Below are positions 29,566-61,521 of a stretch of 64,000 bases of DNA, one piece after another. The notes beneath the pieces were generated by a model. The model saw only the letters and a program-made list of their open reading frames with translations. It searched no databases and was not told the origin of the DNA. The position numbers were made by a program, and so were the translations under genes. The stretch is from positions 174,476 to 238,475 of the IMG/VR virus record IMGVR_UViG_3300043425_001539; one strand, written 5' to 3'. Position 1 is the first letter of the stretch. Every line of letters begins with the position of its first letter.

Positions 29566-30515
29566 TGTATTAAATTGTTTTCAAATATAATATCCGCAAT
29601 CTTTCTTGACGCTCGTGTATCACTGGGATAATGAATTGCCGTTATCTCGCGACTGCGTGCAATCTTTTCCCCCAAGGCCTTGAGTTCATCCTGAAGCGCA
29701 GGATATTTTTGCGCATAATATCGACTCATAACCAATCCTGTAAGTGCATGTCCACTGGGATATGAAGCCGTCATTGCATCAGTTTGAATCAAGGGATAAA
29801 TAGGCATGTTATAGCATTTTGCCAATTGGTAAGGACGAGGACGATTAATCACGTCTTTCAGAAAGAACAGCAGACTATCGGTTTGACTGTCAATTCTAAA
29901 AAAGTCTCCCATACTCTCATCATACCCACCGGCTTTCAATAAGTCAATAAATGTTTGTGCCAAATTGCTTACATCATCAACGTAGCGCGCAAAAGTAATC
30001 TCATCAGCCGTCACTTCACTACAGAATTGTAACAATTCTTCCAAATCCGCGCGTGTTTCTCCGCTTGAATTGCGAGGCGCCTCGGCCCGCAACTTGTCAA
30101 CCCAACCCTGCGCAATAAACCAGTTTTTAATCCGGTCGTGGGTATGTTCTGCAATCTCTTGAAACTCTTGAGTCTGATTCCCGTAAACTACTCGATCCAC
30201 ATCCCAATTGTCAACATCAGTCAACTCCGCTTCGGCCAACAAGTCTTTCCGTCCCAATTGCCGATAAACCTCTTTCCGTGTCTTTTCCATTTTTTCTGCG
30301 TATTCCGGGTCTTCATTCCTGTTAAAAACAATTTGTTGCGTTAGACTTCCGCTGATCTTTTTGAGATCACTCTTGCGTGTTTTGATTAGCCAGGCAGCCA
30401 AATCCCGGATACTCAAATCCCGAAATCTTCCCTCTGCCTCAGGCGCATCACTGTCTCTCCATTTGGGACGTTTGGCTTCAGACAACCATTCTTGAAAACT
30501 TTTCATATCAATCAA
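29562..30515 (-). CDS. PAP2/vanadium-haloperoxidase-like phosphatase (tagged)
   Basis: K....RPRP, SYPSGH and SR....HYPSD motifs; N-terminus MKSFQEWLSE-A. Confidence 0.82.
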   Translation of the reverse strand: MIDMKSFQEWLSEAKRPKWRDSDAPEAEGRFRDLSIRDLAAWLIKTRKSDLKKISGSLTQQIVFNRNEDPEYAEKMEKTRKEVYRQLGRKDLLAEAELTDVDNWDVDRVVYGNQTQEFQEIAEHTHDRIKNWFIAQGWVDKLRAEAPRNSSGETRADLEELLQFCSEVTADEITFARYVDDVSNLAQTFIDLLKAGGYDESMGDFFRIDSQTDSLLFFLKDVINRPRPYQLAKCYNMPIYPLIQTDAMTASYPSGHALTGLVMSRYYAQKYPALQDELKALGEKIARSREITAIHYPSDTRASRKIADIIFENNLIQ

Positions 30516-31302
30516 TTTTTGTAATTGTGGTAATCACGCTGGGCACAGCTGGTCTAACCGGACCTGTCCGACTGGCAATGGCTTCCAATTTAACATTACT
30601 GGTATCAGGTGACCAAACCAAGCTAACTGTGTCCCCTGCATTAAGAGCCACTTGATAGTTAATAACAAACAAATCACGAGTGCCGTTGCCATTAAGTGAA
30701 AGATCAGTTGACGAATAAGCCACATCCAAACCATTGATTCGCAACCAAAAAGTTGCCGCCGCGCTTCCTCCCGCAGTATGAACCACCTGTATACTACTCA
30801 AAATAAGATATATGCCATCAACCCCAATCTCAATCTCTTGTCCATCCAGGCTGAGACTTACGCCAGTTGCCTGATCAACAAGATCATGACTAATCACCTG
30901 TGCCACATCTTCAACGCCCAATTGTTGAACCGTTGACAAGAAAGACCCATACGCAGCAATTCCACTACTACCACTTGAACCACTACTACCACTTGAACCA
31001 CTACTACCACTTGAGGGAAAAGTCTCAACCACTTCAGTAATTGCATGTATAGGAACAACATGAGCAGAGCCCAATACCTGAATCCAACCCTCAGAAGACC
31101 TCGTTGCCCGATTACATAAATAGGCACTAGCAGCAAAAAAACTAGTAGCGTCCGTAGAGAATTGTTGATCCTGTCCAGTTAATAATAGATCAGTACGAAA
31201 AGGAACTTGTGTTTCATCAAGAATCCAATAATACTCTTGATCCTGATAATAACCACTGGTAGGATCATATCCATAACCGCGAATGATTTTGGGTAACAAC
31301 AT
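30508..31302 (-). CDS. Virion fibre-like protein with SSG linker and C1q/BclA-like C-terminal domain
   Basis: (SSG)n linker, then YGSF..Q, G.Y.I..SIQ, WLR.NG.DV..S and LNAGD.V.L.W. Confidence 0.65.
   Translation of the reverse strand: MLLPKIIRGYGYDPTSGYYQDQEYYWILDETQVPFRTDLLLTGQDQQFSTDATSFFAASAYLCNRATRSSEGWIQVLGSAHVVPIHAITEVVETFPSSGSSGSSGSSGSSGSSGIAAYGSFLSTVQQLGVEDVAQVISHDLVDQATGVSLSLDGQEIEIGVDGIYLILSSIQVVHTAGGSAAATFWLRINGLDVAYSSTDLSLNGNGTRDLFVINYQVALNAGDTVSLVWSPDTSNVKLEAIASRTGPVRPAVPSVITTITKID
30962..31013. repeat. 18-bp-period tandem repeat encoding the (SSG)n linker
   Basis: ccactactaccacttgaa, about 3 copies. Confidence 0.85.
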
Positions 31303-31653
31303 AACAAACTATATATCAACAATGGAAACAATATAACAGTAGAACCAACACTCCCAGTGCTGGCGGAAGGCCTGATCATGGGAATTGACCAGTGGATAAA
31401 TGTACTCGTTTTAATAAGTACAAATCACTCTAAAGAGTCTTGAAGACAACCAAAAAATTAAAAATGTACTCTAAATGATTGCCATTGATTGGACTATGAA
31501 AAGCGTGTAGTGGGAAGATTTTAGACGTTAGAAGTGAAATACGGCAAGGCTCTTTGTGTGTGATTTCTTCCGTGTTGGAAAGTATATTTTTCGCAGAGAT
31601 TTCTGCCCATTCTACCCAAATTACGTCTATTGGAGATATCGGAAGTGATTTTG

Positions 31654-31725
31654 TGGTACTGACTGGAATCGAACCAGTGCTACTGGTTCTTCAGACCAGC
31701 GCTCTACCAACTGAGCTACAATACC
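31654..31725 (-). tRNA. tRNA-Phe(GAA)
   Basis: GGTATTG/CAGTACC acceptor; CTGGT-CTGAAGA-ACCAG anticodon arm; TTCGATT T-loop. Confidence 0.9.
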
Positions 31726-31734
31726 AAATAATTG

Positions 31735-31819
31735 CGGATGGGGAGAGATTCGAACTCTCGGTACCTTTCAGTACGACGGTTTTCAAGACCGCTCCATTAA
31801 ACCACTCTGGCACCCATCC
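31735..31819 (-). tRNA. tRNA-Ser(TGA)
   Basis: GGATGGG/CCCATCC acceptor; GCGGT-CTTGAAA-ACCGT; long variable arm. Confidence 0.9.
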
Positions 31820-31934
31820 GTATAGACTATATATTCCTTATTCAAGGGCAAGCATTACGGCCACTTGCCCTGATGGGTCTGGCCTAACCCAATAACTCTT
31901 CGCCACTGTATGGCGGTTTTCTTAACAACTTAAA

Positions 31935-32300
31935 CTAACGAGACAACCATTTTTCCCGATGTACCGCCTTCCAAGCGCGTAGTGCCCGCGACACATACCT
32001 GGATTCTGAGAGACCGTTTTCTTCACGCTCTCGACGGGTCTGGCGGTAGAAAGAAATTCGGGCGGATTCCATCACGTCTTCCTTGGCTTTAAGATAGTCA
32101 GGATAACGACGTTCCAATTCGAGTTCTTCCAACTCTTCTTCGCGATTTTGGGAAGATTTCAGTTGTGCTTCAAATGAATGGTCGGGTTTAACCCGCATGG
32201 TACCTGTTACCCCGGTACCTCCACGTTCAATTAGACGGATCATTTTGTCCATTGCTCTATCAGATTTTGAGCTGCCAACAATACCTTTACCTTTTCCCAT
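31935..32300 (-). CDS. Hypothetical basic protein
   Basis: 121-aa ORF. Confidence 0.55.
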   Translation of the reverse strand: MGKGKGIVGSSKSDRAMDKMIRLIERGGTGVTGTMRVKPDHSFEAQLKSSQNREEELEELELERRYPDYLKAKEDVMESARISFYRQTRREREENGLSESRYVSRALRAWKAVHREKWLSR

Positions 32301-32357
32301 GGTTGTTAATGTTTAAGAAGTTAAGAAGTTAAAAAAATCAAGAATAGTTATAAACTG

Positions 32358-32645
32358 TTACTCTGGATAGAGGTTTTCAAATTCAGCCACAATCTTGTAA
32401 GAAGGAATGCCTACGGCATACAGTTGGTTGATGTATGTGCGTTTTGCCTCGCGTAGATCTCGTGTTTCAAAGCAGTTGTCATCGTGACGGTTGATTACCC
32501 GGAACACTCCATTTAGATTAGCCTCTAGATTGATTCTGTCTTGAGCACAGATGGTTACCCATGTGTTGGCAAGCAGTTCAGAGATTTCAGCGTCAAGCAG
32601 TTCACAGATTGCAGCGTCAGTCAGTTTAATTGTTGTGGTTGTCAT
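32358..32645 (-). CDS. Hypothetical early protein
   Basis: ATG directly follows a promoter cassette. Confidence 0.65.
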   Translation of the reverse strand: MTTTTIKLTDAAICELLDAEISELLANTWVTICAQDRINLEANLNGVFRVINRHDDNCFETRDLREAKRTYINQLYAVGIPSYKIVAEFENLYPE

Positions 32646-32736
32646 AATTGTTGTTTTTTAATTATATACAAATATACATACTTTTTGCGACCTGGCAAAA
32701 TTTTTTCACAACTTTTTTTGTTAATGAATTGTTAAC
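32646..32736 (-). promoter_or_regulatory. Early promoter cassette copy
   Basis: TTTG-ccaggtcgcaaaaagtatg (19 nt)-TATATTTG matches the Bacteroidota -33/-7 promoter. Confidence 0.85.
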
Positions 32737-32861
32737 AGAGCGCGCTGCGGAAAATTTAAACTGGCTGCTTTCTGACCGATTATTCCCTGTTTCTTTCAAC
32801 TGAATCTGCAAACCCTTCGATTGCAATAGCAAATCGTTCAGCGCCATTTCTTTCTGACCGA

Positions 32862-33125
32862 TTATTCCCTGTTTCTTTCAACCGAATCCACAAAATCTTC
32901 AATTGCAAGGGCAAGCCGTTCAACCCGCGCTCTCTCAATTTGACCTTCATTGAGAAGTGCTTGAAGCTGATGAATCAGAGTAAGCGACTCTCGAGTCATA
33001 GTGCAAACAAAGGACTCTCGAGTAGGATCAACTGGTTGATGCTCAACATTGCAAAATTCCTTGTCATTTTCAAAGACACCTGAAACCTCTGTTAGTTTGT
33101 AGCCAAAAGTAAGAGCTCTTATCAT
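32862..33125 (-). CDS. Hypothetical protein
   Basis: 87-aa ORF; its 3' end is duplicated immediately downstream. Confidence 0.6.
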   Translation of the reverse strand: MIRALTFGYKLTEVSGVFENDKEFCNVEHQPVDPTRESFVCTMTRESLTLIHQLQALLNEGQIERARVERLALAIEDFVDSVERNRE

Positions 33126-33185
33126 TGCTTTATTATTTAATTTATATTACTGATATGAAATTAGTTTTCGGGAATCCCCAACTTT

Positions 33186-33665
33186 TTATCGGGCATCAGC
33201 GCCTGTCAAACGGCACACTGCATAATCAACATAATCACCCGGATTAGCTCCTTGTGCCTGACAAAACTCAACCAAGTTGTCAATGTGGTTTTTAATGGCC
33301 CGGTCAAGTCGGTCTTCAGATTCATAAAATCCACGCAGGCGGAACAAGAAAGAATCAAGATATTCAAGGGCATCATCCCGGGTTGGGTCATATGCAATTG
33401 TATGGCTGGTAATATTGCCTGAATCAGCATCGGGTTTTATCAAGCAGCGCATATAAATTTCATCCCGGTCAAACTCCTTGTTCTTAAAGAGACCAATGTG
33501 TATTACCGCGTACAGCGGACTCTCAATCTGAATTTCTTTCCTGTTAAAAGTTTTCTCGTTTTCTTCAAGAACCCGATATTTTTCTTTGCGGTTATTGAGA
33601 AAATCTGTCGTCAGATTAAACAGTTGTTTGATACCTGGGTTGTGTGACAAAGATTTTGCTGGCAT
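33186..33665 (-). CDS. Paralog family A protein
   Basis: ESPL..V..G...DEIY..FL..FC...G..P..YV shared with ORFs at 33681, 34502 and 53670. Confidence 0.7.
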   Translation of the reverse strand: MPAKSLSHNPGIKQLFNLTTDFLNNRKEKYRVLEENEKTFNRKEIQIESPLYAVIHIGLFKNKEFDRDEIYMRCLIKPDADSGNITSHTIAYDPTRDDALEYLDSFLFRLRGFYESEDRLDRAIKNHIDNLVEFCQAQGANPGDYVDYAVCRLTGADAR

Positions 33666-33680
33666 AAGACAGTAATAGGT

Positions 33681-34148
33681 TTAGGGCTTTGGGTTAACGG
33701 GTGCAGTGGGATTTGACATTCTTGAGACCACATAGTCAACATAGCGGTTGGGATGAATCCCCAGATGGAGGCAATATCCAATTACATCCTCAATCTTTTC
33801 CCGAATTGTCTGGTCAAGCTGAATCTCTTTTTCCAGGATTTCTCTTGTTTGATACAGGAACCAATCCAATCCATCGGCCACTTGTTGTACCTCGGGATTG
33901 TAAGAGATAGACGAATATTTCAGCGCCTGCGTTTCCGGATGGTTTTTGACCGTGTACTTAACGTAGATTTCATCCATACCTGTGTCTTCATCTTCATTAC
34001 GTCCCAGAGTAACCACCACATGCAGGGGGCTTTCCACCAGAAATTCCACTCGACCGTTTAGAGGTGTCATGGTATAAGTCAAATGGTTTTTCTTGAGCCT
34101 GTCAACGATAACGTTGTGAAGAAACCGAAGTTTAATTGCTGAGTCCAT
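33681..34148 (-). CDS. Paralog family A protein (likely start MDSAIK)
   Basis: VESPLHVVVTLGR..DEIYVKY..YCLHLGIHPNRYV. Confidence 0.65.
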   Translation of the reverse strand: MDSAIKLRFLHNVIVDRLKKNHLTYTMTPLNGRVEFLVESPLHVVVTLGRNEDEDTGMDEIYVKYTVKNHPETQALKYSSISYNPEVQQVADGLDWFLYQTREILEKEIQLDQTIREKIEDVIGYCLHLGIHPNRYVDYVVSRMSNPTAPVNPKP

Positions 34149-34197
34149 ATGAATGAGAATTGCTGGTGAATAGGTTTTCTGGGGTTGGCTTTTGGAA

Positions 34198-34404
34198 TTA
34201 CAATTTATCGTTTTCCCGATCACAGAATATCCTACATTGGTCGTAGGTACCGCGGTAAATGATTTCGTCGTCTTCAGCTAATTCGTAGTTGATAGCCGAC
34301 TCAACGAAATTGCTGGTGCCGTCAAAGATGACGATCGAATCCCGTTCTTGAGAGCGATTAGAACGATTGGCGGTGGCAGTGGAAATGGAGCGGAGAGTGC
34401 GCAT
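34198..34404 (-). CDS. Hypothetical early protein (start MRTLRS)
   Basis: Lies after a promoter cassette. Confidence 0.5.
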   Translation of the reverse strand: MRTLRSISTATANRSNRSQERDSIVIFDGTSNFVESAINYELAEDDEIIYRGTYDQCRIFCDRENDKL

Positions 34405-34429
34405 AGGATGGTGATTGGTGAACGTGATT

Positions 34430-34516
34430 GGTTGTTTATTAATTATATACAAATATACAAACTTTTCGCGACCTGGCAAAACTATTTCACAACTTTTTTT
34501 GTTAACAAAGTGTTAA
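34430..34516 (-). promoter_or_regulatory. Early promoter cassette copy
   Basis: TTTGCCAGGTCGCGAAAAGTTTGTATATTTGTATATAA. Confidence 0.8.
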
Positions 34517-34975
34517 TCCCGTATCGCGTTTAATTCTGCCAGCCAAATAAGAGACAAAAACTTCTGGGTTGATGTCATGTTGCAAACAAAAGGTAATTAC
34601 TTCATAAACCTGGCTTCGAAGAATTTCCTCCAGTGCTGCTTCTTGCAGTTCCTCTTGTTGTACGCGGTTCAAAAAAGCTGTTATTTCATGAGCAGTCTCT
34701 TCGGGAGTGGGGTTAAATGAAGTGGAAGAATACAGCTTTTGCTCAATATCAGAATAAGGCAACCGGGTTGTGATGCTATACTTAGTGTAGAACTCATAGA
34801 GTTCATCAGTGTCTTTACTGTCGTTTGTGAAACGGCCAAGTTCAATAACAACATGTAGACGGCTGTGAACAGTAAATTCTTTGTGGTCAAAGCAATGGTC
34901 AAAGCTGTATTCTGTTCCGTTTGCTTCAAGCTGGTTAACGATTGCGTTGTAGAGTGATTGGAATTTGTCGGTCAT
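34502..34975 (-). CDS. Paralog family A protein (start MTDKFQ)
   Basis: HSRLHVVIELGRF..DE.Y..FCLQHDINPEVFV; stop codon lies inside the next cassette. Confidence 0.7.
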   Translation of the reverse strand: MTDKFQSLYNAIVNQLEANGTEYSFDHCFDHKEFTVHSRLHVVIELGRFTNDSKDTDELYEFYTKYSITTRLPYSDIEQKLYSSTSFNPTPEETAHEITAFLNRVQQEELQEAALEEILRSQVYEVITFCLQHDINPEVFVSYLAGRIKRDTGLTLC

Positions 34976-34983
34976 GTTGTTGC

Positions 34984-35069
34984 GTTGTTTTAATTTATAT
35001 ACAAATATACATACTTTTTGCGAACTGGCAAAATTTTTGGGCAACTTTTTTTGTTAATGAATTGTTAAC
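34984..35069 (-). promoter_or_regulatory. Early promoter cassette copy
   Basis: Same consensus. Confidence 0.8.
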
Positions 35070-35346
35070 AAGGAGCGCCCACAATGTTGATTTCTCTGAC
35101 CTGTGCAACCTCCATAAAACCGTTGTTGATGTCAACATACCAGGTCCAAGTATTTTTAGTAGGCAAGTGTTCCTGGAACATACCTGCAGGCTCATCAGTT
35201 TCTGCAGCCATTTCGGCACATTCACGGGCATATTCCTTGGCCCGATTAAACGCTGCTTCCTGGTCTACATAAGTATTCAAGAGAGAGTAAGAGGTACCAG
35301 CGGTATACTCCTCGCACATAAAAACCTGGTATGCTTTAAATTCCAT
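35065..35346 (-). CDS. Hypothetical early protein (start MEFKAY)
   Basis: Single gene between two cassettes. Confidence 0.65.
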   Translation of the reverse strand: MEFKAYQVFMCEEYTAGTSYSLLNTYVDQEAAFNRAKEYARECAEMAAETDEPAGMFQEHLPTKNTWTWYVDINNGFMEVAQVREINIVGAPC

Positions 35347-35350
35347 GATC

Positions 35351-35443
35351 GGTTGTTTTTTAATTATATACAAATATACATACTTTTTGCAACCTGGCAA
35401 AATTTTTGGGCAACTTTTTTTCTCAAAAAGTGTTAAAATTTTC
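35351..35443 (-). promoter_or_regulatory. Early promoter cassette copy
   Basis: Same consensus. Confidence 0.8.
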
Positions 35444-35449
35444 GCCTTA

Positions 35450-35908
35450 TCATCTTTGCAATTCAAGAATTATTGCTTCGCGGGCCCTCTCTATTTCCTC
35501 AATTTTTTCGTTCAGCTTGGCTAATTCTTTTAATAGTAAAGTTTTGGCGTAATTAACTCCTCCTTCAGCGGCGGGATTCAGTATGACATATTCATTTCCG
35601 GGTTGTATGATGTCCAAGAAATCCGTCTCGCGGCTAAGATGTTGCAGGTGTTCATCGAAAATGAGGTGGTCTCCCATAAAAGGAGTGCGCTCTATAAGAG
35701 AGTTTTGCCAACCGTTGTGATCAAACGGATGTCCCAAATGATAGGCGGTAGGTTTACCCAAATGATAGGCGGCTGAGCTTGACTGCCAGGCACCTGCGCG
35801 TAAACGGGGTTTGGTAATAAAGGCATACGCATGCCCATTTGAGTCAATGGCGGCATAATTGTAACCCACGGGTATCATTTCAATTTCCAGAGTTTTCATA
35901 GAGGACAT
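35450..35908 (-). CDS. WAAVD-family paralog
   Basis: IPVGYNYAAIDSNGHAYAF..WQNSLI. Confidence 0.65.
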   Translation of the reverse strand: MSSMKTLEIEMIPVGYNYAAIDSNGHAYAFITKPRLRAGAWQSSSAAYHLGKPTAYHLGHPFDHNGWQNSLIERTPFMGDHLIFDEHLQHLSRETDFLDIIQPGNEYVILNPAAEGGVNYAKTLLLKELAKLNEKIEEIERAREAIILELQR

Positions 35909-36190
35909 AATAAATAAATTGTTGGTTGATATACAAATAAAAAAACAAACGCTTGAGAAAGTGAAATATAAGGACATCTTTGCCGCCAAAGTTTTAAATT
36001 TCCTGGTAATCTTCCCGAATTATGCGTTCAAGACGAGCAACTCGCTCTTTAAGAAATTCACGCCGCCTGTGCATTTCATGCCGGGCATCAATGTCATCGG
36101 TTTCAAGCATTTGTTCGGCAATGTAGTCAATGTTTTCCTGTAGTTGCCTCCGGGTTAATTGTAGCTGTTCAAGAGTTTGATTCATAGTTT

Positions 36191-36406
36191 TTATTGTGCA
36201 AATGTGAGTTGACGTAAATTGTGAAAATGGTATTCCTCGATTTGTTTGGTAAAATAATTCCTGAGGGCTGATGTTAGTCTTGCCCATTTGACTGTCTCTT
36301 GATTCTTAAATACTCCTGCTAAATAATCAGCGGTGTGTACATAGTCCTCAGCCCGAAAATAATCAAGTAAGTCTTGAACCCGGATATAAGTAATAGAATC
36401 CTTCAT
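36191..36406 (-). CDS. Hypothetical protein
   Basis: 71-aa ORF in the gene run. Confidence 0.5.
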   Translation of the reverse strand: MKDSITYIRVQDLLDYFRAEDYVHTADYLAGVFKNQETVKWARLTSALRNYFTKQIEEYHFHNLRQLTFAQ

Positions 36407-36412
36407 ATAAAA

Positions 36413-36715
36413 TTATTGTTTGACTTGTGGAAACAACTCAGCCTTGACCGTGTCTTCAATCTCTGCAATCCGCGTAAGCAAATCATTTTGCTGTTTACGG
36501 ATGTCATTGATTCGTTCGTCTGATTGGGTAAAGTGAAGTTGTTCCTCCAAATAGCCAACCATAAACAAGAGTGACTGTTTTTCAATTGTCAATTGCTTGA
36601 GAGTGGTGTCTTCCATAAATTTTTGTTCTGCTCTCGCTCCATAAACCGAATTTTCTAAAATTCGGTATAAAGTTTGATGGGATTTTTCTTTTGATGCCGG
36701 GCTTAATTTTGACAT
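36413..36715 (-). CDS. Hypothetical coiled-coil protein
   Basis: 100-aa ORF. Confidence 0.55.
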   Translation of the reverse strand: MSKLSPASKEKSHQTLYRILENSVYGARAEQKFMEDTTLKQLTIEKQSLLFMVGYLEEQLHFTQSDERINDIRKQQNDLLTRIAEIEDTVKAELFPQVKQ

Positions 36716-36828
36716 AGTTAAAGTTTTTTTAAAATTAAGAAGCTTATACTACATTCGAAGGATACGAGACTTAGCTTCTTTCTTTGCTTTGGGCTTTCGG
36801 CCGACTTGCAATTCAAGTTTTTATCCAC

Positions 36829-36964
36829 TGGCGGTCAGGACAGGAGTCGAACCTGTATGAAGATAAGTAACTTCTTCAATCCCGTGCTTTATTCTCCGCT
36901 CAACTACCTCGCGGGTTAGATTCACTTACACGTTATTTTCGGATGCCAATTCCGTCACCTGACC
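36829..36964 (-). ncRNA. tRNA-like RNA with expanded central region (possible intron-containing tRNA)
   Basis: GGTCAGG/CCTGACC acceptor + G-CCA; ACAGG-TTCGACT-CCTGT T-arm; CGGAATTGG D-loop; 136 nt long. Confidence 0.65.
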
Positions 36965-36971
36965 TTGATTG

Positions 36972-37065
36972 TGGAACACTGGGATTCGAACCCACACGGT
37001 ACCTGTATAAATTTGCCGGCAATTCATACAGGCCAACCCAGTTGTTTTAAACCACACTGTGTCCC
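36972..37065 (-). ncRNA. tRNA-like RNA with a 12-bp central hairpin
   Basis: GGGACAC/GTGTTCC acceptor; TGGG-TTCGAAT-CCCA T-arm; CCTGTATGAATT/AATTTATACAGG stem. Confidence 0.6.
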
Positions 37066-37078
37066 GTTTTTTAATTGT

Positions 37079-37211
37079 GATCAGGCCAGGGTCAAACTGT
37101 ATGTGACGCTCTTAGGGCTTAAGCGAGTCCCAGCCATAGGGTTAACACATGCCTCGGTCAATTCCGATTTTTGTATCTTCACTAGCAGTTGAATCAACCC
37201 TGGTCCTGATC
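37079..37211 (-). ncRNA. Structured ncRNA of unknown family
   Basis: Terminal pairing GATCAGGACCAGGGTTGA..TTGACCCTGGCCTGATC with internal hairpins. Confidence 0.55.
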
Positions 37212-37220
37212 GGTGGTTAA

Positions 37221-37480
37221 CAACGGTACGCGCGCCGTTGATTTTCAAAAACTCCGTGCGCCGTGGGAAATCCTTGTGTATCCTGATCCAGGAGGATTTC
37301 CCAGCGGTACTCGGGAAAGCAAGATTTATGTCGAGTCAACATTTCATCAGCGGATTCTTTGGTTAAACCAGCTGTGTGGATTTACCCATTCTTAATTAGG
37401 GAATAAGATGGCGCTTTTTCTAAAGTAGCTTCCTGTCCTGGACCTTGAAACCAAGCCTGGCTTGTCAACCAAGCTTGGTA
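37221..37480 (-). ncRNA. Putative structured ncRNA
   Basis: No minus-strand ORF; perfect TGGGAAATCCT/AGGATTTCCCA stem; CCAAGCTTGG/CCAGGCTTGG stem with a G-U pair on the minus strand. Confidence 0.45.
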
Positions 37481-37561
37481 TGATTTAGGTGTGGACAAGA
37501 ATGACTGCCCGCGGAATTTGCCAAATTTGAGAATGAAATCTTGCATAGTATAAATTATTTA

Positions 37562-37837
37562 TTAATATTGACACTCAACCTGGTACAAACGTTGTCCGTC
37601 AACCTTGACCAAGCGCCATGGGTTTTGCTTTGTAAACTTGTAAAAGTAGCCAGTTAAATCAGTAATGGAACCTACGTAATAGCCACGGTGCTTGCGCCAG
37701 TCATATTCACTCAAGTCCTTGATTTCTCCGTTAACCAAGAGTACTTCCTTCACAATGTCAGTGTAAGTAAATTCTTGATTGCCAAAGCGCAACATAAGTC
37801 CTTGCATTACCCGGGATTTAACGTTTTTGTTTTTCAT
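37562..37837 (-). CDS. Paralog family B protein (YDWRKHRGYY)
   Basis: Close paralog of ORFs at 41122 and 54176. Confidence 0.75.
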   Translation of the reverse strand: MKNKNVKSRVMQGLMLRFGNQEFTYTDIVKEVLLVNGEIKDLSEYDWRKHRGYYVGSITDLTGYFYKFTKQNPWRLVKVDGQRLYQVECQY

Positions 37838-37915
37838 AATTGTTGTTGTTTTTAATTTATATACAAATATACAACTATTAGTTGACTAAAAAAAATTTTT
37901 GGGCAACTTTTTTTT
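37838..37915 (-). promoter_or_regulatory. Early promoter cassette copy
   Basis: Same consensus. Confidence 0.8.
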
Positions 37916-37922
37916 ATTTTTT

Positions 37923-38192
37923 TTAAAAAAAGTCTATCGGGTCACAGCCAGGAATAAATTGGTCAATGAAAATAGCAAAGTTGTTGTTGTAGCCTTCAGC
38001 AAATGACATGTCACTTTTGGCAACACCCATTTTAACTAGTTTGGCAATTGCCGCTTGGCGCTTCTTGTCGGTGTCAAACATAAAAACCATTTGCTCGATA
38101 GCGTCAATGTAGTCGGTGTCCACGCGTTTTTCTATGCAGTTAAAATGGCTGGCAGGAAGTTGGGCAAGTGTTTTAAAAAGCTTGGTTGTCAT
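37923..38192 (-). CDS. Hypothetical early protein
   Basis: Single gene between two cassettes. Confidence 0.65.
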   Translation of the reverse strand: MTTKLFKTLAQLPASHFNCIEKRVDTDYIDAIEQMVFMFDTDKKRQAAIAKLVKMGVAKSDMSFAEGYNNNFAIFIDQFIPGCDPIDFF

Positions 38193-38322
38193 AATTGTTG
38201 TTGTTTTTTAATTATATACAAATATACATACTTTTTACAAGCTGGCAAAATTTTTTCACAACTTTTTTTCTCCAAAAGTGTTAAAATTTTCTGAGACAAG
38301 AGATAAGAGATAAAAGAGATAA
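38193..38322 (-). promoter_or_regulatory. Early promoter cassette copy with upstream TTATCTC repeats
   Basis: Cassette plus gagacaagagataagagataaaagagataa. Confidence 0.8.
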
Positions 38323-38444
38323 TTAAAAGGGTCCTTCGTTGGTACTCATCGTTATCGGCCGATTCGAGTTTTCCCCATTCTTGTTTTATTAAAGTGTACT
38401 TCCCTACTGGACATTTGAAGTCAACACATTTTAATTTATTATTG

Positions 38445-41121: not shown

Positions 41122-41415
41122 TTAAGAAAAAATTGGATTAGGACCTTCAACCCGATACCGGGGTTTGTCATCAACGTAAACCACTACCAGGCGCCATGGG
41201 TTTTGTGGAGTTGACTTGTAAAAGTATCCCCACCATTTGCTGATGGTGCCAGCATAATACCCACGGTGCTTGCGCCAGTCATATTCACTCAAGTCAGTGA
41301 TTTCTCCGTTGACCAAGAGCACTTCTTTGACAATATCAGTATATGAAAATTCCCCGTCACCAAACCTATTTTTAAGGGCGCGCATTACTCGGGATTTAAC
41401 ATTTTTGTTTCTCAT
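41122..41415 (-). CDS. Paralog family B protein
   Basis: NKNVKSRVM..YDWRKHRGYY..QNPWRLV. Confidence 0.75.
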   Translation of the reverse strand: MRNKNVKSRVMRALKNRFGDGEFSYTDIVKEVLLVNGEITDLSEYDWRKHRGYYAGTISKWWGYFYKSTPQNPWRLVVVYVDDKPRYRVEGPNPIFS

Positions 41416-61399: not shown

Positions 61400-61521
61400 T
61401 AGCCAGGACAGGATTCGAACCTGCACGACGATTGAGAACTGATTAACCCTGCTAATAGTTAAGGAGATTCACCTTCCAGCAAAATCATCACAGCTGCGTC
61501 TACCAATTCCGCCACCTGACT
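61400..61521 (-). ncRNA. tRNA-like RNA with an elongated anticodon arm (possible intron)
   Basis: AGTCAGG/CCTGGCT acceptor; GGCGGAATTGGTAGACGC D-arm; GCAGG-TTCGAAT-CCTGT T-arm; 122 nt long. Confidence 0.7.

What the first reader, a model, noticed from the sequence alone, without database searches (positions are those of the whole stretch)
37079..37530. Cluster of unannotated structured ncRNAs in an 800-bp ORF-free early transcript
Seen: 36716-37561 has no minus-strand ORF in the track although the genome is otherwise densely coding. 37079-37211 is closed by a long terminal helix with internal hairpins (TCGG/CCGA, CGCTTAAG/CTAAGAGCG). 37221-37480 has an 11-bp perfect stem (37264-37274 with 37293-37303) and a 10-bp stem whose single mismatch becomes G-U only on the minus strand. 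I do not recognise tmRNA, RNase P or SRP signatures. Inference: one or more novel phage ncRNAs co-transcribed with the tRNA mimics.
Basis: partly seen in the sequence, partly recalled or inferred. Interest (0 to 1): 0.6.

Follow-up and report, generated by a model that had tools for sequence, protein, structure and literature searches.

The report
Phage small RNA in decayed tRNA scaffold
Half of the flagged stretch is an ordinary small protein gene carrying a premature stop, while the other half is a real structured phage RNA from a previously unnamed family found in the tRNA gene arrays of freshwater phages, here carried in a worn-down tRNA-like frame.

Summary
The finding is two different things.

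- Sister strains carry an intact 109-aa ORF here. The window has a TAC>TAA nonsense change at codon 55.
- A 118-aa homologue from an unrelated phage aligns over residues 1-105 at 52% identity.

**37079-37211 (-) is a genuine structured RNA.**
- Its middle, 37097-37189, is a four-helix core found in 16 other phage and metagenome loci, each time in or beside a tRNA array or tRNA-like gene.
- 8 of its 22 base pairs show compensatory changes.
- A covariance model built without the window hits it at 101 bits (E about 1e-21). It is the only hit in the 238-kb genome.
- In several relatives the same core sits at the anticodon position of a tRNA-Leu-like scaffold. More than 120 viral contigs carry that scaffold, with highly variable middles.
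- In the window the scaffold's D and T arms have changed into a 10-bp extension of the acceptor helix.

**What it is not.** It matches no Rfam family. It is not a Y RNA, although the phage encodes Ro60. It is not a pistol ribozyme, although 14 nt equal the pistol active-site strand.

Its function is unknown. I think it is most likely a stable trans-acting small RNA cut out of a tRNA-type precursor.

The parts
37079..37211 (-). 133-nt structured RNA: a conserved four-helix core closed by a long rod that derives from a tRNA-Leu-like scaffold
   Evidence: Fold is -50.1 kcal/mol, z = -4.8. It is a single copy in the 238-kb genome. It is identical in two other assemblies (A2). It is collinear over its full length with the scaffold RNAs L163:121-264, L166:363-506 and L168:3581-3723 (A4).
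37097..37189 (-). Conserved core module: closing helix P0 plus hairpins H1, H2 and H3. This is the part shared with 16 other loci.
   Evidence: Model R3, built without the window, scores 101.4 bits, E = 1.3e-21, and this is the only hit in the genome. Covariation was counted on A3. Homologues were found.
37205..37211 (-). 5' strand of the acceptor-type helix (GAUCAGG). It pairs with 37079-37085.
   Evidence: It lies in the same register as GGUCAGG/CCUGACC of the neighbouring tRNA-like gene and AGUCAGG/CCUGACU of the family. Pairs 1:72 and 2:71 are changed on both sides.
37194..37203 (-). Former D-arm region, now the 5' strand of a 10-bp extension helix that pairs with 37086-37095
   Evidence: One search gives the fold. 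Alignment A4 shows this stretch is unlike the family's D arm, whereas the core differs from its relatives at only a few positions.
37079..37102 (-). Former T arm plus the acceptor 3' strand. Two bases are missing relative to the family and the T-loop motif is lost. It is followed by the family's usual ACAA trailer at 37075-37078.
   Evidence: Local alignment with the neighbouring tRNA-like gene falls at the same offset from the 3' end. Score is 26 against 14.9 +/- 2.1 in shuffles, and 1 of 2000 shuffles reaches it.
37111..37124 (-). Invariant 14-nt block in H3 (GCUUAAGCCCUAAG), identical to the active-site and pseudoknot strand of the env25 pistol ribozyme
   Evidence: It is invariant in all 10 distinct core sequences. 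The identity with pistol was found. The Pistol covariance model does not match.
37217..37546 (-). Small protein gene of 109 aa in sister strains, with a DUF3820-like N-terminus. Here it is interrupted by an in-frame TAA at 37382-37384, leaving a 54-aa product.
   Evidence: ORFs are listed. The intact ORF is seen in L031 and L033. DNA runs X3, X7 and X8 read G at 37382, which gives TAC. The RNA-library run X5 has the window's allele. Homologue P0003 is 52% identical over residues 1-105. The Pfam PF12843 match is weak, 18.5 bits against a cut-off of 22.
36972..37065 (-). tRNA-like gene 1, the next gene downstream. It has a 7-bp acceptor stem, a T arm and a 12-bp stem where the anticodon stem would be. 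ARAGORN does not call it a tRNA.
   Evidence: Sequence, fold, ARAGORN.
36829..36964 (-). tRNA-like gene 2. It is a diverged member of the tRNA-Leu-like scaffold family, with an encoded CCA and its own conserved cargo, which it shares with L050.
   Evidence: nhmmer with the 3' block gives E = 3e-7. Rfam tRNA gives only 18.5 bits. The cargo is 84% identical to L050.

Best explanation
**The gene (shown).** 37217-37546 is a small protein gene with a recent nonsense allele. It is not an RNA gene.

**The RNA (shown).**
- 37079-37211 encodes a small structured RNA on the minus strand.
- Its working part is a conserved core of about 90 nt: a closing helix P0 and three hairpins.
- The core belongs to a phage-only family that lies in or beside tRNA genes or tRNA-like scaffold RNAs, on their strand.
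- The core travels in three kinds of packaging:
  - at the anticodon position of a tRNA-Leu-like scaffold;
  - closed by an unrelated long helix;
  - closed by a short helix directly after a promoter-like site.
- The window's copy began as the scaffold type. Its D and T arms have since been converted into an extension of the acceptor helix, which makes a rod.

**How it works (inferred).**
- The RNA is transcribed together with the upstream small genes and the downstream tRNA-like genes.
- It is released from that precursor by the enzymes that mature tRNAs and long hairpin RNAs (RNase P-type 5' cleavage, 3' trimming).
- The closing helix gives stability. The invariant H1 and H3 surfaces bind a protein or RNA partner that is still unknown.
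For: **The gene**
- The ORF is intact in two assemblies and three DNA runs.
- A homologue covers its full length.
- Changes downstream of the stop fall on third codon positions.

**The RNA family**
- 16 further loci carry the core.
- Across 10 distinct sequences, 92.7% of cells are paired and 8 of 22 pairs change on both sides. 0 of 500 shuffles reach this, and slid controls give 28-47% paired.
- P0 reads GUGG/CCAC, GCGG/CCGC, ACGG/CCGU, AAAG/CUUU, and GUGA/UCAC in the window.
- H2 reads CCC/GGG, CGG/CCG and CAG/CUG.
- Three invariant G-U pairs would be mismatches on the other strand.
- Model R3, built without the window, scores 101.4 bits.

**Context**
- In the six loci where ARAGORN calls tRNAs (L160, L161, L166, L168, L171, L172) the core is on their strand. 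L146 shows a tRNA array in the sequence itself. L164 and L173 have no called tRNA, and there the core sits in or beside a tRNA-Leu-like scaffold.
- In the window it stands directly upstream of two tRNA-like genes, and the window's tRNAs are on the same strand.

**Scaffold origin**
- The element aligns collinearly over its full length with scaffold-borne copies.
- Its 3' end matches the neighbouring scaffold gene at the same offset, z about 5.
- Acceptor pairs 1:72 and 2:71 changed on both sides.

**One transcription unit**
- There is no terminator-like site in 36300-38400.
- One adapter-flanked fragment in an RNA library spans 37104-37538, joining the gene to the RNA.

**Precedent.** In T4, one 1.75-kb transcript is the precursor of eight tRNAs, the species I and II RNAs and the segB mRNA (PMC2330249).
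Against: - No direct evidence exists for a discrete processed RNA, for its ends, or for a partner.
- The single RNA-library contig may be DNA carry-over. If it is RNA, it shows the unprocessed form.
- The core alone is not thermodynamically unusual.
- The invariance of H1 and H3 is partly an effect of fishing with exact words taken from those hairpins.
- There are only 10 distinct sequences, about 85% alike, so the covariation rests on few events.
- One related strain (run X8) replaces 36939-37182 with 450 other letters. This removes the core, so the RNA is dispensable there.
- The T arm that RNase P and CCA-adding enzymes normally use is gone in this copy.
Confidence: 0.7

Rival explanations
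1. The 133-nt element is a dead pseudogene of a scaffold RNA. The rod arose by chance or by a single template-switch event that copied the complement of the 3' end into the 5' end. Nothing selects for it now.
For: - The D and T arms, which are the hallmarks of the scaffold, are destroyed.
- Profiles of the scaffold ends do not detect it.
- A related strain lacks most of it.
- The upstream gene is itself broken in this strain.
Against: - The core differs from its relatives at only a few positions (about 96% identical to L146 over 72 nt), while the flanks changed heavily.
- P0 carries a copy-specific compensatory change, G-C to A-U.
- The acceptor helix kept all 7 pairs through two double changes.
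- Rod-closed copies of the same core exist independently in L171, L172 and L146.
- Two G-U pairs extend the rod only on the transcribed strand.
Confidence: 0.13
2. It acts in cis. The long double-stranded rod would be an RNase III-type processing site or a 3' stabiliser. It would separate the upstream mRNA from the downstream tRNA-like RNAs, and the core would be incidental.
For: - The rod has about 21 nearly continuous base pairs and starts 5 nt after the stop codon of the upstream gene.
- There is no terminator in the unit.
- The z-score comes from the rod, not from the core.
Against: - What is conserved across loci is the core. The closing helix differs completely in sequence and length between loci.
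- In other loci the core is not preceded by an mRNA. It follows a promoter-like site or a scaffold RNA.
Confidence: 0.08
3. It is the Y RNA partner of the phage's Ro60/Rsr protein.
For: - The genome encodes a 541-aa TROVE plus vWA-like protein.
- The element has the paired 5' and 3' ends of a Y RNA, with UUGACC on the 3' strand.
- The next ORF downstream, 36413-36715, starts like the Rsr protein: 43% identity over 40 aa.
Against: - It lies about 41 kb from rsr, whereas YrlA-type RNAs lie within 4 kb (PMC4201824).
- It lacks the GNCGAAN0-1G motif and the T- and D-like arms.
- Better Y RNA candidates flank tRNA-Gly right beside rsr. They carry a GAAGCGG motif and a covarying closing stem, and relatives have them too.
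- A 118-kb contig that carries the core has no TROVE gene.
Confidence: 0.03
4. It is a DNA-level element: a miniature transposon with terminal inverted repeats, or a recombination or homing target. It would not be an RNA.
For: - The termini are 14-nt near-perfect inverted repeats.
- The plus strand folds almost as well.
- The region is mosaic between strains, with breakpoints inside the tRNA-like genes.
- An HNH endonuclease gene sits next to the core in L160.
Against: - It is a single copy in the genome.
- No target-site duplication is visible.
- Compensatory changes and strand-specific G-U pairs point to selection on RNA pairing.
- In each locus with called tRNAs its orientation follows theirs.
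Confidence: 0.04

Closest known systems
T4 species I and II RNAs (small stable RNAs encoded inside the T4 tRNA gene cluster)
   Same: Both are small non-tRNA RNAs of roughly 100-140 nt encoded among phage tRNA genes. Both are made from one precursor that also carries an mRNA (PMC2330249). Function is unknown in both cases.
   Different: The present core moves between different closing helices and scaffolds, which has not been described for the T4 RNAs. The sizes quoted for the T4 RNAs come from my own knowledge.
YrlA-type bacterial and phage Y RNAs (Chen et al. 2014, PMC4201824)
   Same: Both are tRNA-mimicking non-coding RNAs encoded by phages, with a long helix formed by the two ends. This phage also encodes Ro60.
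   Different: In YrlA the ends form the Ro-binding stem and the tRNA-like part is internal. Here the ends form the acceptor-type stem and the foreign module sits where the anticodon arm would be. The motif, distance and arm criteria are not met (see the membership test).
Pistol self-cleaving ribozyme (Rfam RF02679; env25 sequence in PMC7373991 and PMC6101554)
   Same: 14 consecutive nucleotides of hairpin H3 equal the env25 strand that carries the pseudoknot and the active-site purines.
   Different: The covariance model does not match. There is no cis partner for the pseudoknot. There is no P3 hairpin and no G-U junction. In the core this strand is closed into a simple hairpin.
Engineered tRNA scaffolds for expressing recombinant RNAs (for example PMC4402540)
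   Same: A foreign structured RNA replaces the anticodon arm of a tRNA body. In the engineered case this gives processing and stability.
   Different: Those are laboratory constructs. Here the arrangement is natural, occurs in more than 120 viral contigs with 69 unrelated cargo groups, and no function has been shown.
GOLLD and ROOL RNAs (large ornate RNAs of phages, often beside tRNA arrays; PMC12286853)
   Same: Both are phage non-coding RNAs of unknown function located in tRNA arrays. A GOLLD RNA lies in one of the contigs that carries scaffold RNAs (L115).
   Different: They are several-fold larger (about 400-800 nt), have their own Rfam families, and show no similarity to the core.

Membership tests
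Core RNA motif defined here (models R2 and R3; no published name found) | Significant match to a covariance model built without the candidate | tested here: met
   R3 was built from 10 other sequences. It gives 101.4 bits, E = 1.3e-21, at 37097-37189(-), the only hit in the 238-kb genome.
Core RNA motif defined here (models R2 and R3; no published name found) | Closing helix P0 and hairpin H2 kept through compensatory changes | tested here: met
   P0 has 4 of 4 pairs and H2 has 3 of 4 pairs with changes on both sides. The window has GUGA/UCAC where most others have GUGG/CCAC.
Core RNA motif defined here (models R2 and R3; no published name found) | Location in or beside a phage tRNA array or tRNA-like scaffold gene, on the same strand | tested here: met
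   Six loci (L160, L161, L166, L168, L171, L172) have called tRNAs on the core's strand. L146 shows an array in its sequence. In L164 and L173 the context is a tRNA-Leu-like scaffold only. In the window the element stands next to two tRNA-like genes, and the tRNAs are on the minus strand.
tRNA-Leu-like scaffold RNAs with variable middle (family seen; no published name found) | Conserved 5' block: acceptor strand plus a tRNA-Leu-type D arm | tested here: not met
   Only UCAGG of the acceptor strand remains. An nhmmer profile of the 5' block does not find the element. Alignment A4 shows the D arm replaced.
tRNA-Leu-like scaffold RNAs with variable middle (family seen; no published name found) | Conserved 3' block: CAU, T arm, acceptor strand, A, then a CAA-type trailer | tested here: inconclusive
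   24 of 31 aligned positions match, with two 1-nt gaps. The local alignment to the neighbouring member lies at the same offset, and 1 of 2000 shuffles reaches its score. However, the nhmmer profile does not reach E < 100 genome-wide, and the T-loop motif is lost.
tRNA-Leu-like scaffold RNAs with variable middle (family seen; no published name found) | Cargo placed between the D arm and the T arm, collinear with other members | tested here: met
   The element aligns over its full length with L163, L166 and L168, which carry the same core in an intact scaffold.
tRNA (Rfam RF00005) | Cloverleaf with D, anticodon and T arms recognised by tRNA finders | tested here: not met
   ARAGORN makes no call here. 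Rfam tRNA gives no match on 37079-37211 even at E <= 10.
Y RNA / YrlA | Encoded within about 4 kb of the Ro60/rsr gene on the same strand | tested here: not met
   rsr is at G000:C1:169529-171154(-) and the element at 211554-211686(-). They share a strand but lie about 41 kb apart. The criterion comes from PMC4201824.
Y RNA / YrlA | GNCGAAN0-1G motif near the 5' end | tested here: not met
   The motif is absent from the first 30 nt of the element. The rsr-adjacent RNAs carry a related GAAGCGG motif.
Y RNA / YrlA | Internal T-arm-like and D-arm-like hairpins | tested here: not met
   None of H1-H3 has a T-loop or D-loop consensus.
Pistol ribozyme (RF02679) | Score at or above the family's gathering threshold of 34.5 bits | tested here: not met
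   There is no match at E <= 10 on 37060-37230, nor in G000 or in four records that carry the core.
Pistol ribozyme (RF02679) | Pseudoknot between the P1 loop and the internal strand, plus a P3 hairpin followed by the G-U cleavage junction | tested here: not met
   No UUAGGG-type partner is present in cis. The strand is closed by GC/GC into hairpin H3, with no P3 and no G-U junction.
DUF3820-like small proteins (Pfam PF12843), for 37217-37546 | Pfam match above the gathering score | tested here: not met
   The score is 18.5 bits (54-aa form) and 17.4 bits (109-aa form) against a cut-off of 22. One homologue is named 'DUF3820 family' by its source. The N-terminal 36 residues are nearly invariant among 7 homologues.

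The most novel reading that the evidence does not exclude
Freshwater phages use a tRNA-Leu-like body as a natural expression cassette. The acceptor, D and T arms are kept almost letter for letter, while the anticodon position carries dozens of unrelated structured RNAs. I counted 69 cargo groups among 105 distinct members.

On this reading the core in the window is one such cargo with a function of its own. It could be a new catalytic or ligand- or RNA-binding fold related to the pistol ribozyme, whose active-site strand it shares. It could instead be a decoy aimed at a host defence factor. Because it works in any packaging, it survives loss of the scaffold.
Probability: 0.2. Interest if true: 0.85.

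Novelty: new variant of a known kind. Interest (0 to 1): 0.62.

Why it matters
**For annotation**
- Half of the flagged 'non-coding' stretch is a gene with a strain-specific nonsense allele.
- Hairpins inside it are a by-product of coding repeats.

**For RNA biology**
- The other half leads to two things I could find neither in Rfam 15 nor in the paper library.
- The first is a small four-helix RNA module, seen only in phages, that moves between different closing helices.
- The second is a widespread tRNA-Leu-like scaffold whose anticodon position carries highly variable inserts.
- If those inserts are functional, phage tRNA arrays would be a store of small effector RNAs that tRNA finders skip or score as poor tRNAs.
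- That would also give a natural counterpart to the engineered tRNA scaffold.
- The small stable RNAs of phage tRNA clusters have had no known function since the T4 species I and II RNAs were described. This family offers many natural variants for testing.

Tried and rejected
- **Rfam.** Searched at gathering thresholds and at E <= 10 on the window, the region and the 171-nt stretch. Only chance-level matches appeared.
- **Y RNA idea.** Prompted by the TROVE gene. Rejected on distance, motif and arms. The likely Y RNAs lie beside rsr.
- **Flanking proteins as anchors in IMG/VR.** No relatives were found for the 91-aa and 100-aa ORFs.
- **DNA and single-sequence model R1 against ten and five related phage records respectively.** Only short chance matches. 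Two hits that looked promising near rsr genes fell inside coding sequence.
- **Exact-word scans for the element's odd 3' end.** Nothing in viral or metagenome contigs. The rod form is confined to this strain cluster.
- **Core word in one genome per bacterial and archaeal species (about 186,000).** No hit.
- **Model R2 over about 1.3 Mb of fetched loci.** No further diverged members.
- **Pistol ribozyme.** The model does not match. An env25-specific word is absent from viral contigs.
- **Pairing of the H3 loop with the anticodon loop of tRNA-Leu(UAG).** The tRNA in L160 offers only 4 bp, so I dropped this.
- **Shared motif among scaffold cargoes.** No k-mer exceeds the shuffle expectation.
- **Retron and miniature-transposon readings.** Single copy and no target duplication. 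I did not search for a reverse transcriptase.
- **Limits of the protein word search.** It sees only proteins of 0.55-1.75 times the query length, so longer fusions of the 109-aa protein would have been missed.

Full report
**Setting.** The window is the last 64 kb of a 238,475-bp IMG/VR virus record, estimated 84% complete. Nearly all genes, including 12 tRNA genes, lie on the minus strand. Public runs that hold the stretch are mostly freshwater metagenomes. The flagged region lies in a segment of raised G+C: 0.40-0.44 at 30-38 kb against about 0.30 on either side.

**Checking the observation.**
- The 133 nt at 37079-37211 fold on the minus strand into a long terminal helix that closes three hairpins. 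The energy is -50.1 kcal/mol, z = -4.8.
- The plus strand folds nearly as well.
- The claim that 36716-37561 has no minus-strand ORF is not right. A 54-aa ORF lies at 37382-37546. It has a weak DUF3820-type Pfam match.

**The second 'ncRNA' is a gene.**
- A word search with the upstream 91-aa protein led to short contigs of the same phage from other samples. In these the next gene is 109 aa, not 54.
- The alignment shows TAC in those contigs where the window has TAA, at codon 55 (37382-37384). The frame then runs on to the stop at 37217.
- Laying public runs on the region shows the TAC allele in three DNA runs. The window's TAA allele appears in a contig from an RNA library, so the stop is a real variant and not an assembly error.
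- A 118-aa protein from a different, smaller phage is 52% identical over residues 1-105, including the part behind the window's stop.
- Six further homologues share a nearly invariant 36-residue N-terminus.
- The stems in this stretch are therefore features of coding sequence. One comes from a repeated Gln-Ala-Trp motif.

**The first 'ncRNA' has relatives.**
- The element is a single copy in the genome.
- It is identical in the sister contigs.
- It was not found in related phages that share a Ro60 gene at 49-62% protein identity.
- The lead came from the read-laying step. Two joints skipped exactly 244 letters, which is the offset between the element and the second tRNA-like gene downstream.
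- The two 3' ends align at the same offset. Both read CAUACAG, then a T-arm-like stretch, then CCUGNCCUGA. The score lies about 5 standard deviations above shuffles, and 1 of 2000 shuffles reaches it.
- The terminal 7-bp helices are in register, with compensatory differences.

**The scaffold family.**
- A degenerate word from that 3' end found more than 120 viral contigs.
- Their members share a tRNA-Leu-type 5' block (acceptor strand and D arm) and a 3' block (T arm, acceptor strand, A, trailer).
- The middle runs from 32 to 158 nt and falls into 69 unrelated groups among 105 distinct sequences.
- They sit in phage tRNA arrays.
- ARAGORN does not call them tRNAs. Rfam's tRNA model gives some of them 29-44 bits.
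- The window holds an intact member at 61400-61521 and a diverged one at 36829-36964.

**The core.**
- Comparing the element's middle with all fetched loci gave a 72-nt match at 96% identity in L146.
- Word scans with two of its hairpins then found 15 more loci.
- The core occurs in three kinds of packaging:
  - inside an intact scaffold: L163/L164, L166, L168/L170, L173;
  - after a scaffold RNA and closed by an unrelated long helix: L146, L169, L171, L172;
  - directly after a promoter-like site and closed by AAUUAAAG/CUUUAAUU: L159-L162, L165, L167.
- On ten distinct sequences, the four-helix structure has 92.7% of cells paired. 8 of 22 pairs change on both sides. No shuffle out of 500 reaches the observed values, and slid controls give 28-47% paired.
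- P0 and H2 carry the covariation. The H1 apex and H3 never vary, which is partly because the loci were fished with words from those hairpins.
- A model built without the window scores it at 101.4 bits.
- The core alone is not unusually stable. The word from H3 is absent from about 186,000 bacterial and archaeal species genomes.

**What happened in the window.**
- The element aligns end to end with the scaffold-borne copies.
- The core differs at a few positions. P0 has a compensated change.
- The D-arm region is almost wholly different, and the T arm has lost two bases and its loop motif.
- The altered 5' and 3' regions are now complementary to each other: 10 bp, two of them G-U, plus a further 4 bp. 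The acceptor helix is thus prolonged into a rod.
- Independent rod-closed copies elsewhere show that the core does not need the tRNA body.
- I cannot tell whether the rod arose by gradual selection or by one template-switch event.

**How it probably works.**
- *Shown:* the family, the structure, the strand, the context, and the origin from a scaffold.
- *Inferred:* co-transcription with neighbours. There is no terminator-like site in 36300-38400. One adapter-flanked fragment at 37104-37538 comes from an RNA library and could be DNA.
- *Inferred:* release by tRNA-type processing, by analogy with the T4 tRNA cluster transcript that yields tRNAs, the species I and II RNAs and an mRNA (PMC2330249).
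- *Inferred:* action in trans through the invariant H1 and H3 surfaces. The partner is unknown.

**Comparison with known families.**
- *Y RNA.* The phage encodes a Ro60/Rsr homologue, so I tested this. The criteria of Chen et al. 2014 are not met. Better candidates flank tRNA-Gly beside rsr, with a GAAGCGG motif and a covarying closing stem. Relatives have them too. A 118-kb contig that carries the core has no TROVE gene.
- *Pistol ribozyme.* Fourteen nucleotides of H3 equal the env25 pistol strand that bears the pseudoknot and the active-site purines. The Pistol model does not match, and the other pistol elements are missing. I report this as an unexplained lead.
- *Literature.* The paper library gave no description of the scaffold family or of the core.

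**Verdict.** The rest is a broken small gene.

**Scores.**
- Confidence in the anatomy and the general mode of action is 0.7.
- Interest is 0.62. The single element is a modest find, but it exposes a widespread and odd scaffold-plus-cargo arrangement in phage tRNA arrays.

Noticed in passing
window 61400-61521 (-) and 36829-36964 (-); L039-L158: A tRNA-Leu-like scaffold RNA family. The acceptor, D-arm and T-arm blocks are nearly constant, and the middle is highly variable at 32-158 nt. More than 120 viral contigs carry it, and 105 distinct members fall into 69 cargo groups. Members sit in tRNA arrays, and some contigs hold 2-4 copies. ARAGORN does not call them tRNAs. Some cargoes covary between phages, for example the window's 36829-36964 against L050.
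   Followed up: partly
G000:C1 about 171160-171430 (= L002 2430-2700, minus strand), just outside the window; L004-L014: Two RNAs of about 80 nt flank tRNA-Gly directly upstream of the phage Ro60/Rsr gene. Each starts YYNGAAGCGG, carries GUUACUUCA, and ends with a complementary UCRRR. Relatives have three such units with covarying closing stems. In L011 the units include a T-arm. These are the likely Y RNAs of this phage group.
   Followed up: partly
window 36413-36715 (-): The first 40 residues of this 100-aa ORF are 43% identical to the N-terminus of the phage's own 541-aa Ro60/Rsr protein (E = 3e-5 for the pair). The rest looks like a coiled coil. It may be a remnant of a partial duplication of the rsr 5' end.
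   Followed up: partly
window 36972-37065 (-): A tRNA-like gene with a normal acceptor stem (a G-U at pair 3:70) and a normal T arm. It has a 12-bp stem with a 7-nt loop where the 5-bp anticodon stem should be. tRNA finders do not call it.
   Followed up: no
window 36939-37182, and L031 from about position 1550: The RNA cluster is mosaic between strains. One metagenome run replaces 244 letters with 450 others, and both breakpoints fall just behind the 5' blocks of two tRNA-like genes. In L031 the sequence diverges from the window inside the T arm of the second tRNA-like gene and continues into a different scaffold gene.
   Followed up: partly
window 37111-37124 (-): A 14-nt identity with the env25 pistol ribozyme strand that holds its pseudoknot and active-site purines. 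No other pistol feature is present, and the similarity is unexplained.
   Followed up: yes
window about 37840-37935, 38200-38295, 35350-35440, 34450-34535 (-): A repeated block of about 70 nt sits upstream of many small ORFs, with an A/T run, TTGCC and TATA-like boxes. It is probably a phage promoter type. One copy is 76% identical over 103 nt to a 635-kb uncultured phage (LR745206.1). Assemblies break at these repeats.
   Followed up: no
window 30000-38000: A segment of raised G+C (0.40-0.44 against about 0.30) holds many small ORFs. It includes three paralogous genes of 159-180 aa at 33186-35044. The 91-aa gene at 37562-37837 has a 70%-identical paralogue at 41122-41385.
   Followed up: no
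L115 (IMGVR_UViG_3300046004_002124): One contig with scaffold RNAs also carries a GOLLD RNA (317 bits), a tmRNA and a freshwater-1 RNA among its tRNA genes.
   Followed up: no
L160 437-943 (+): An HNH-type endonuclease gene stands directly upstream of the promoter-like site and the core RNA, inside a tRNA array.
   Followed up: no
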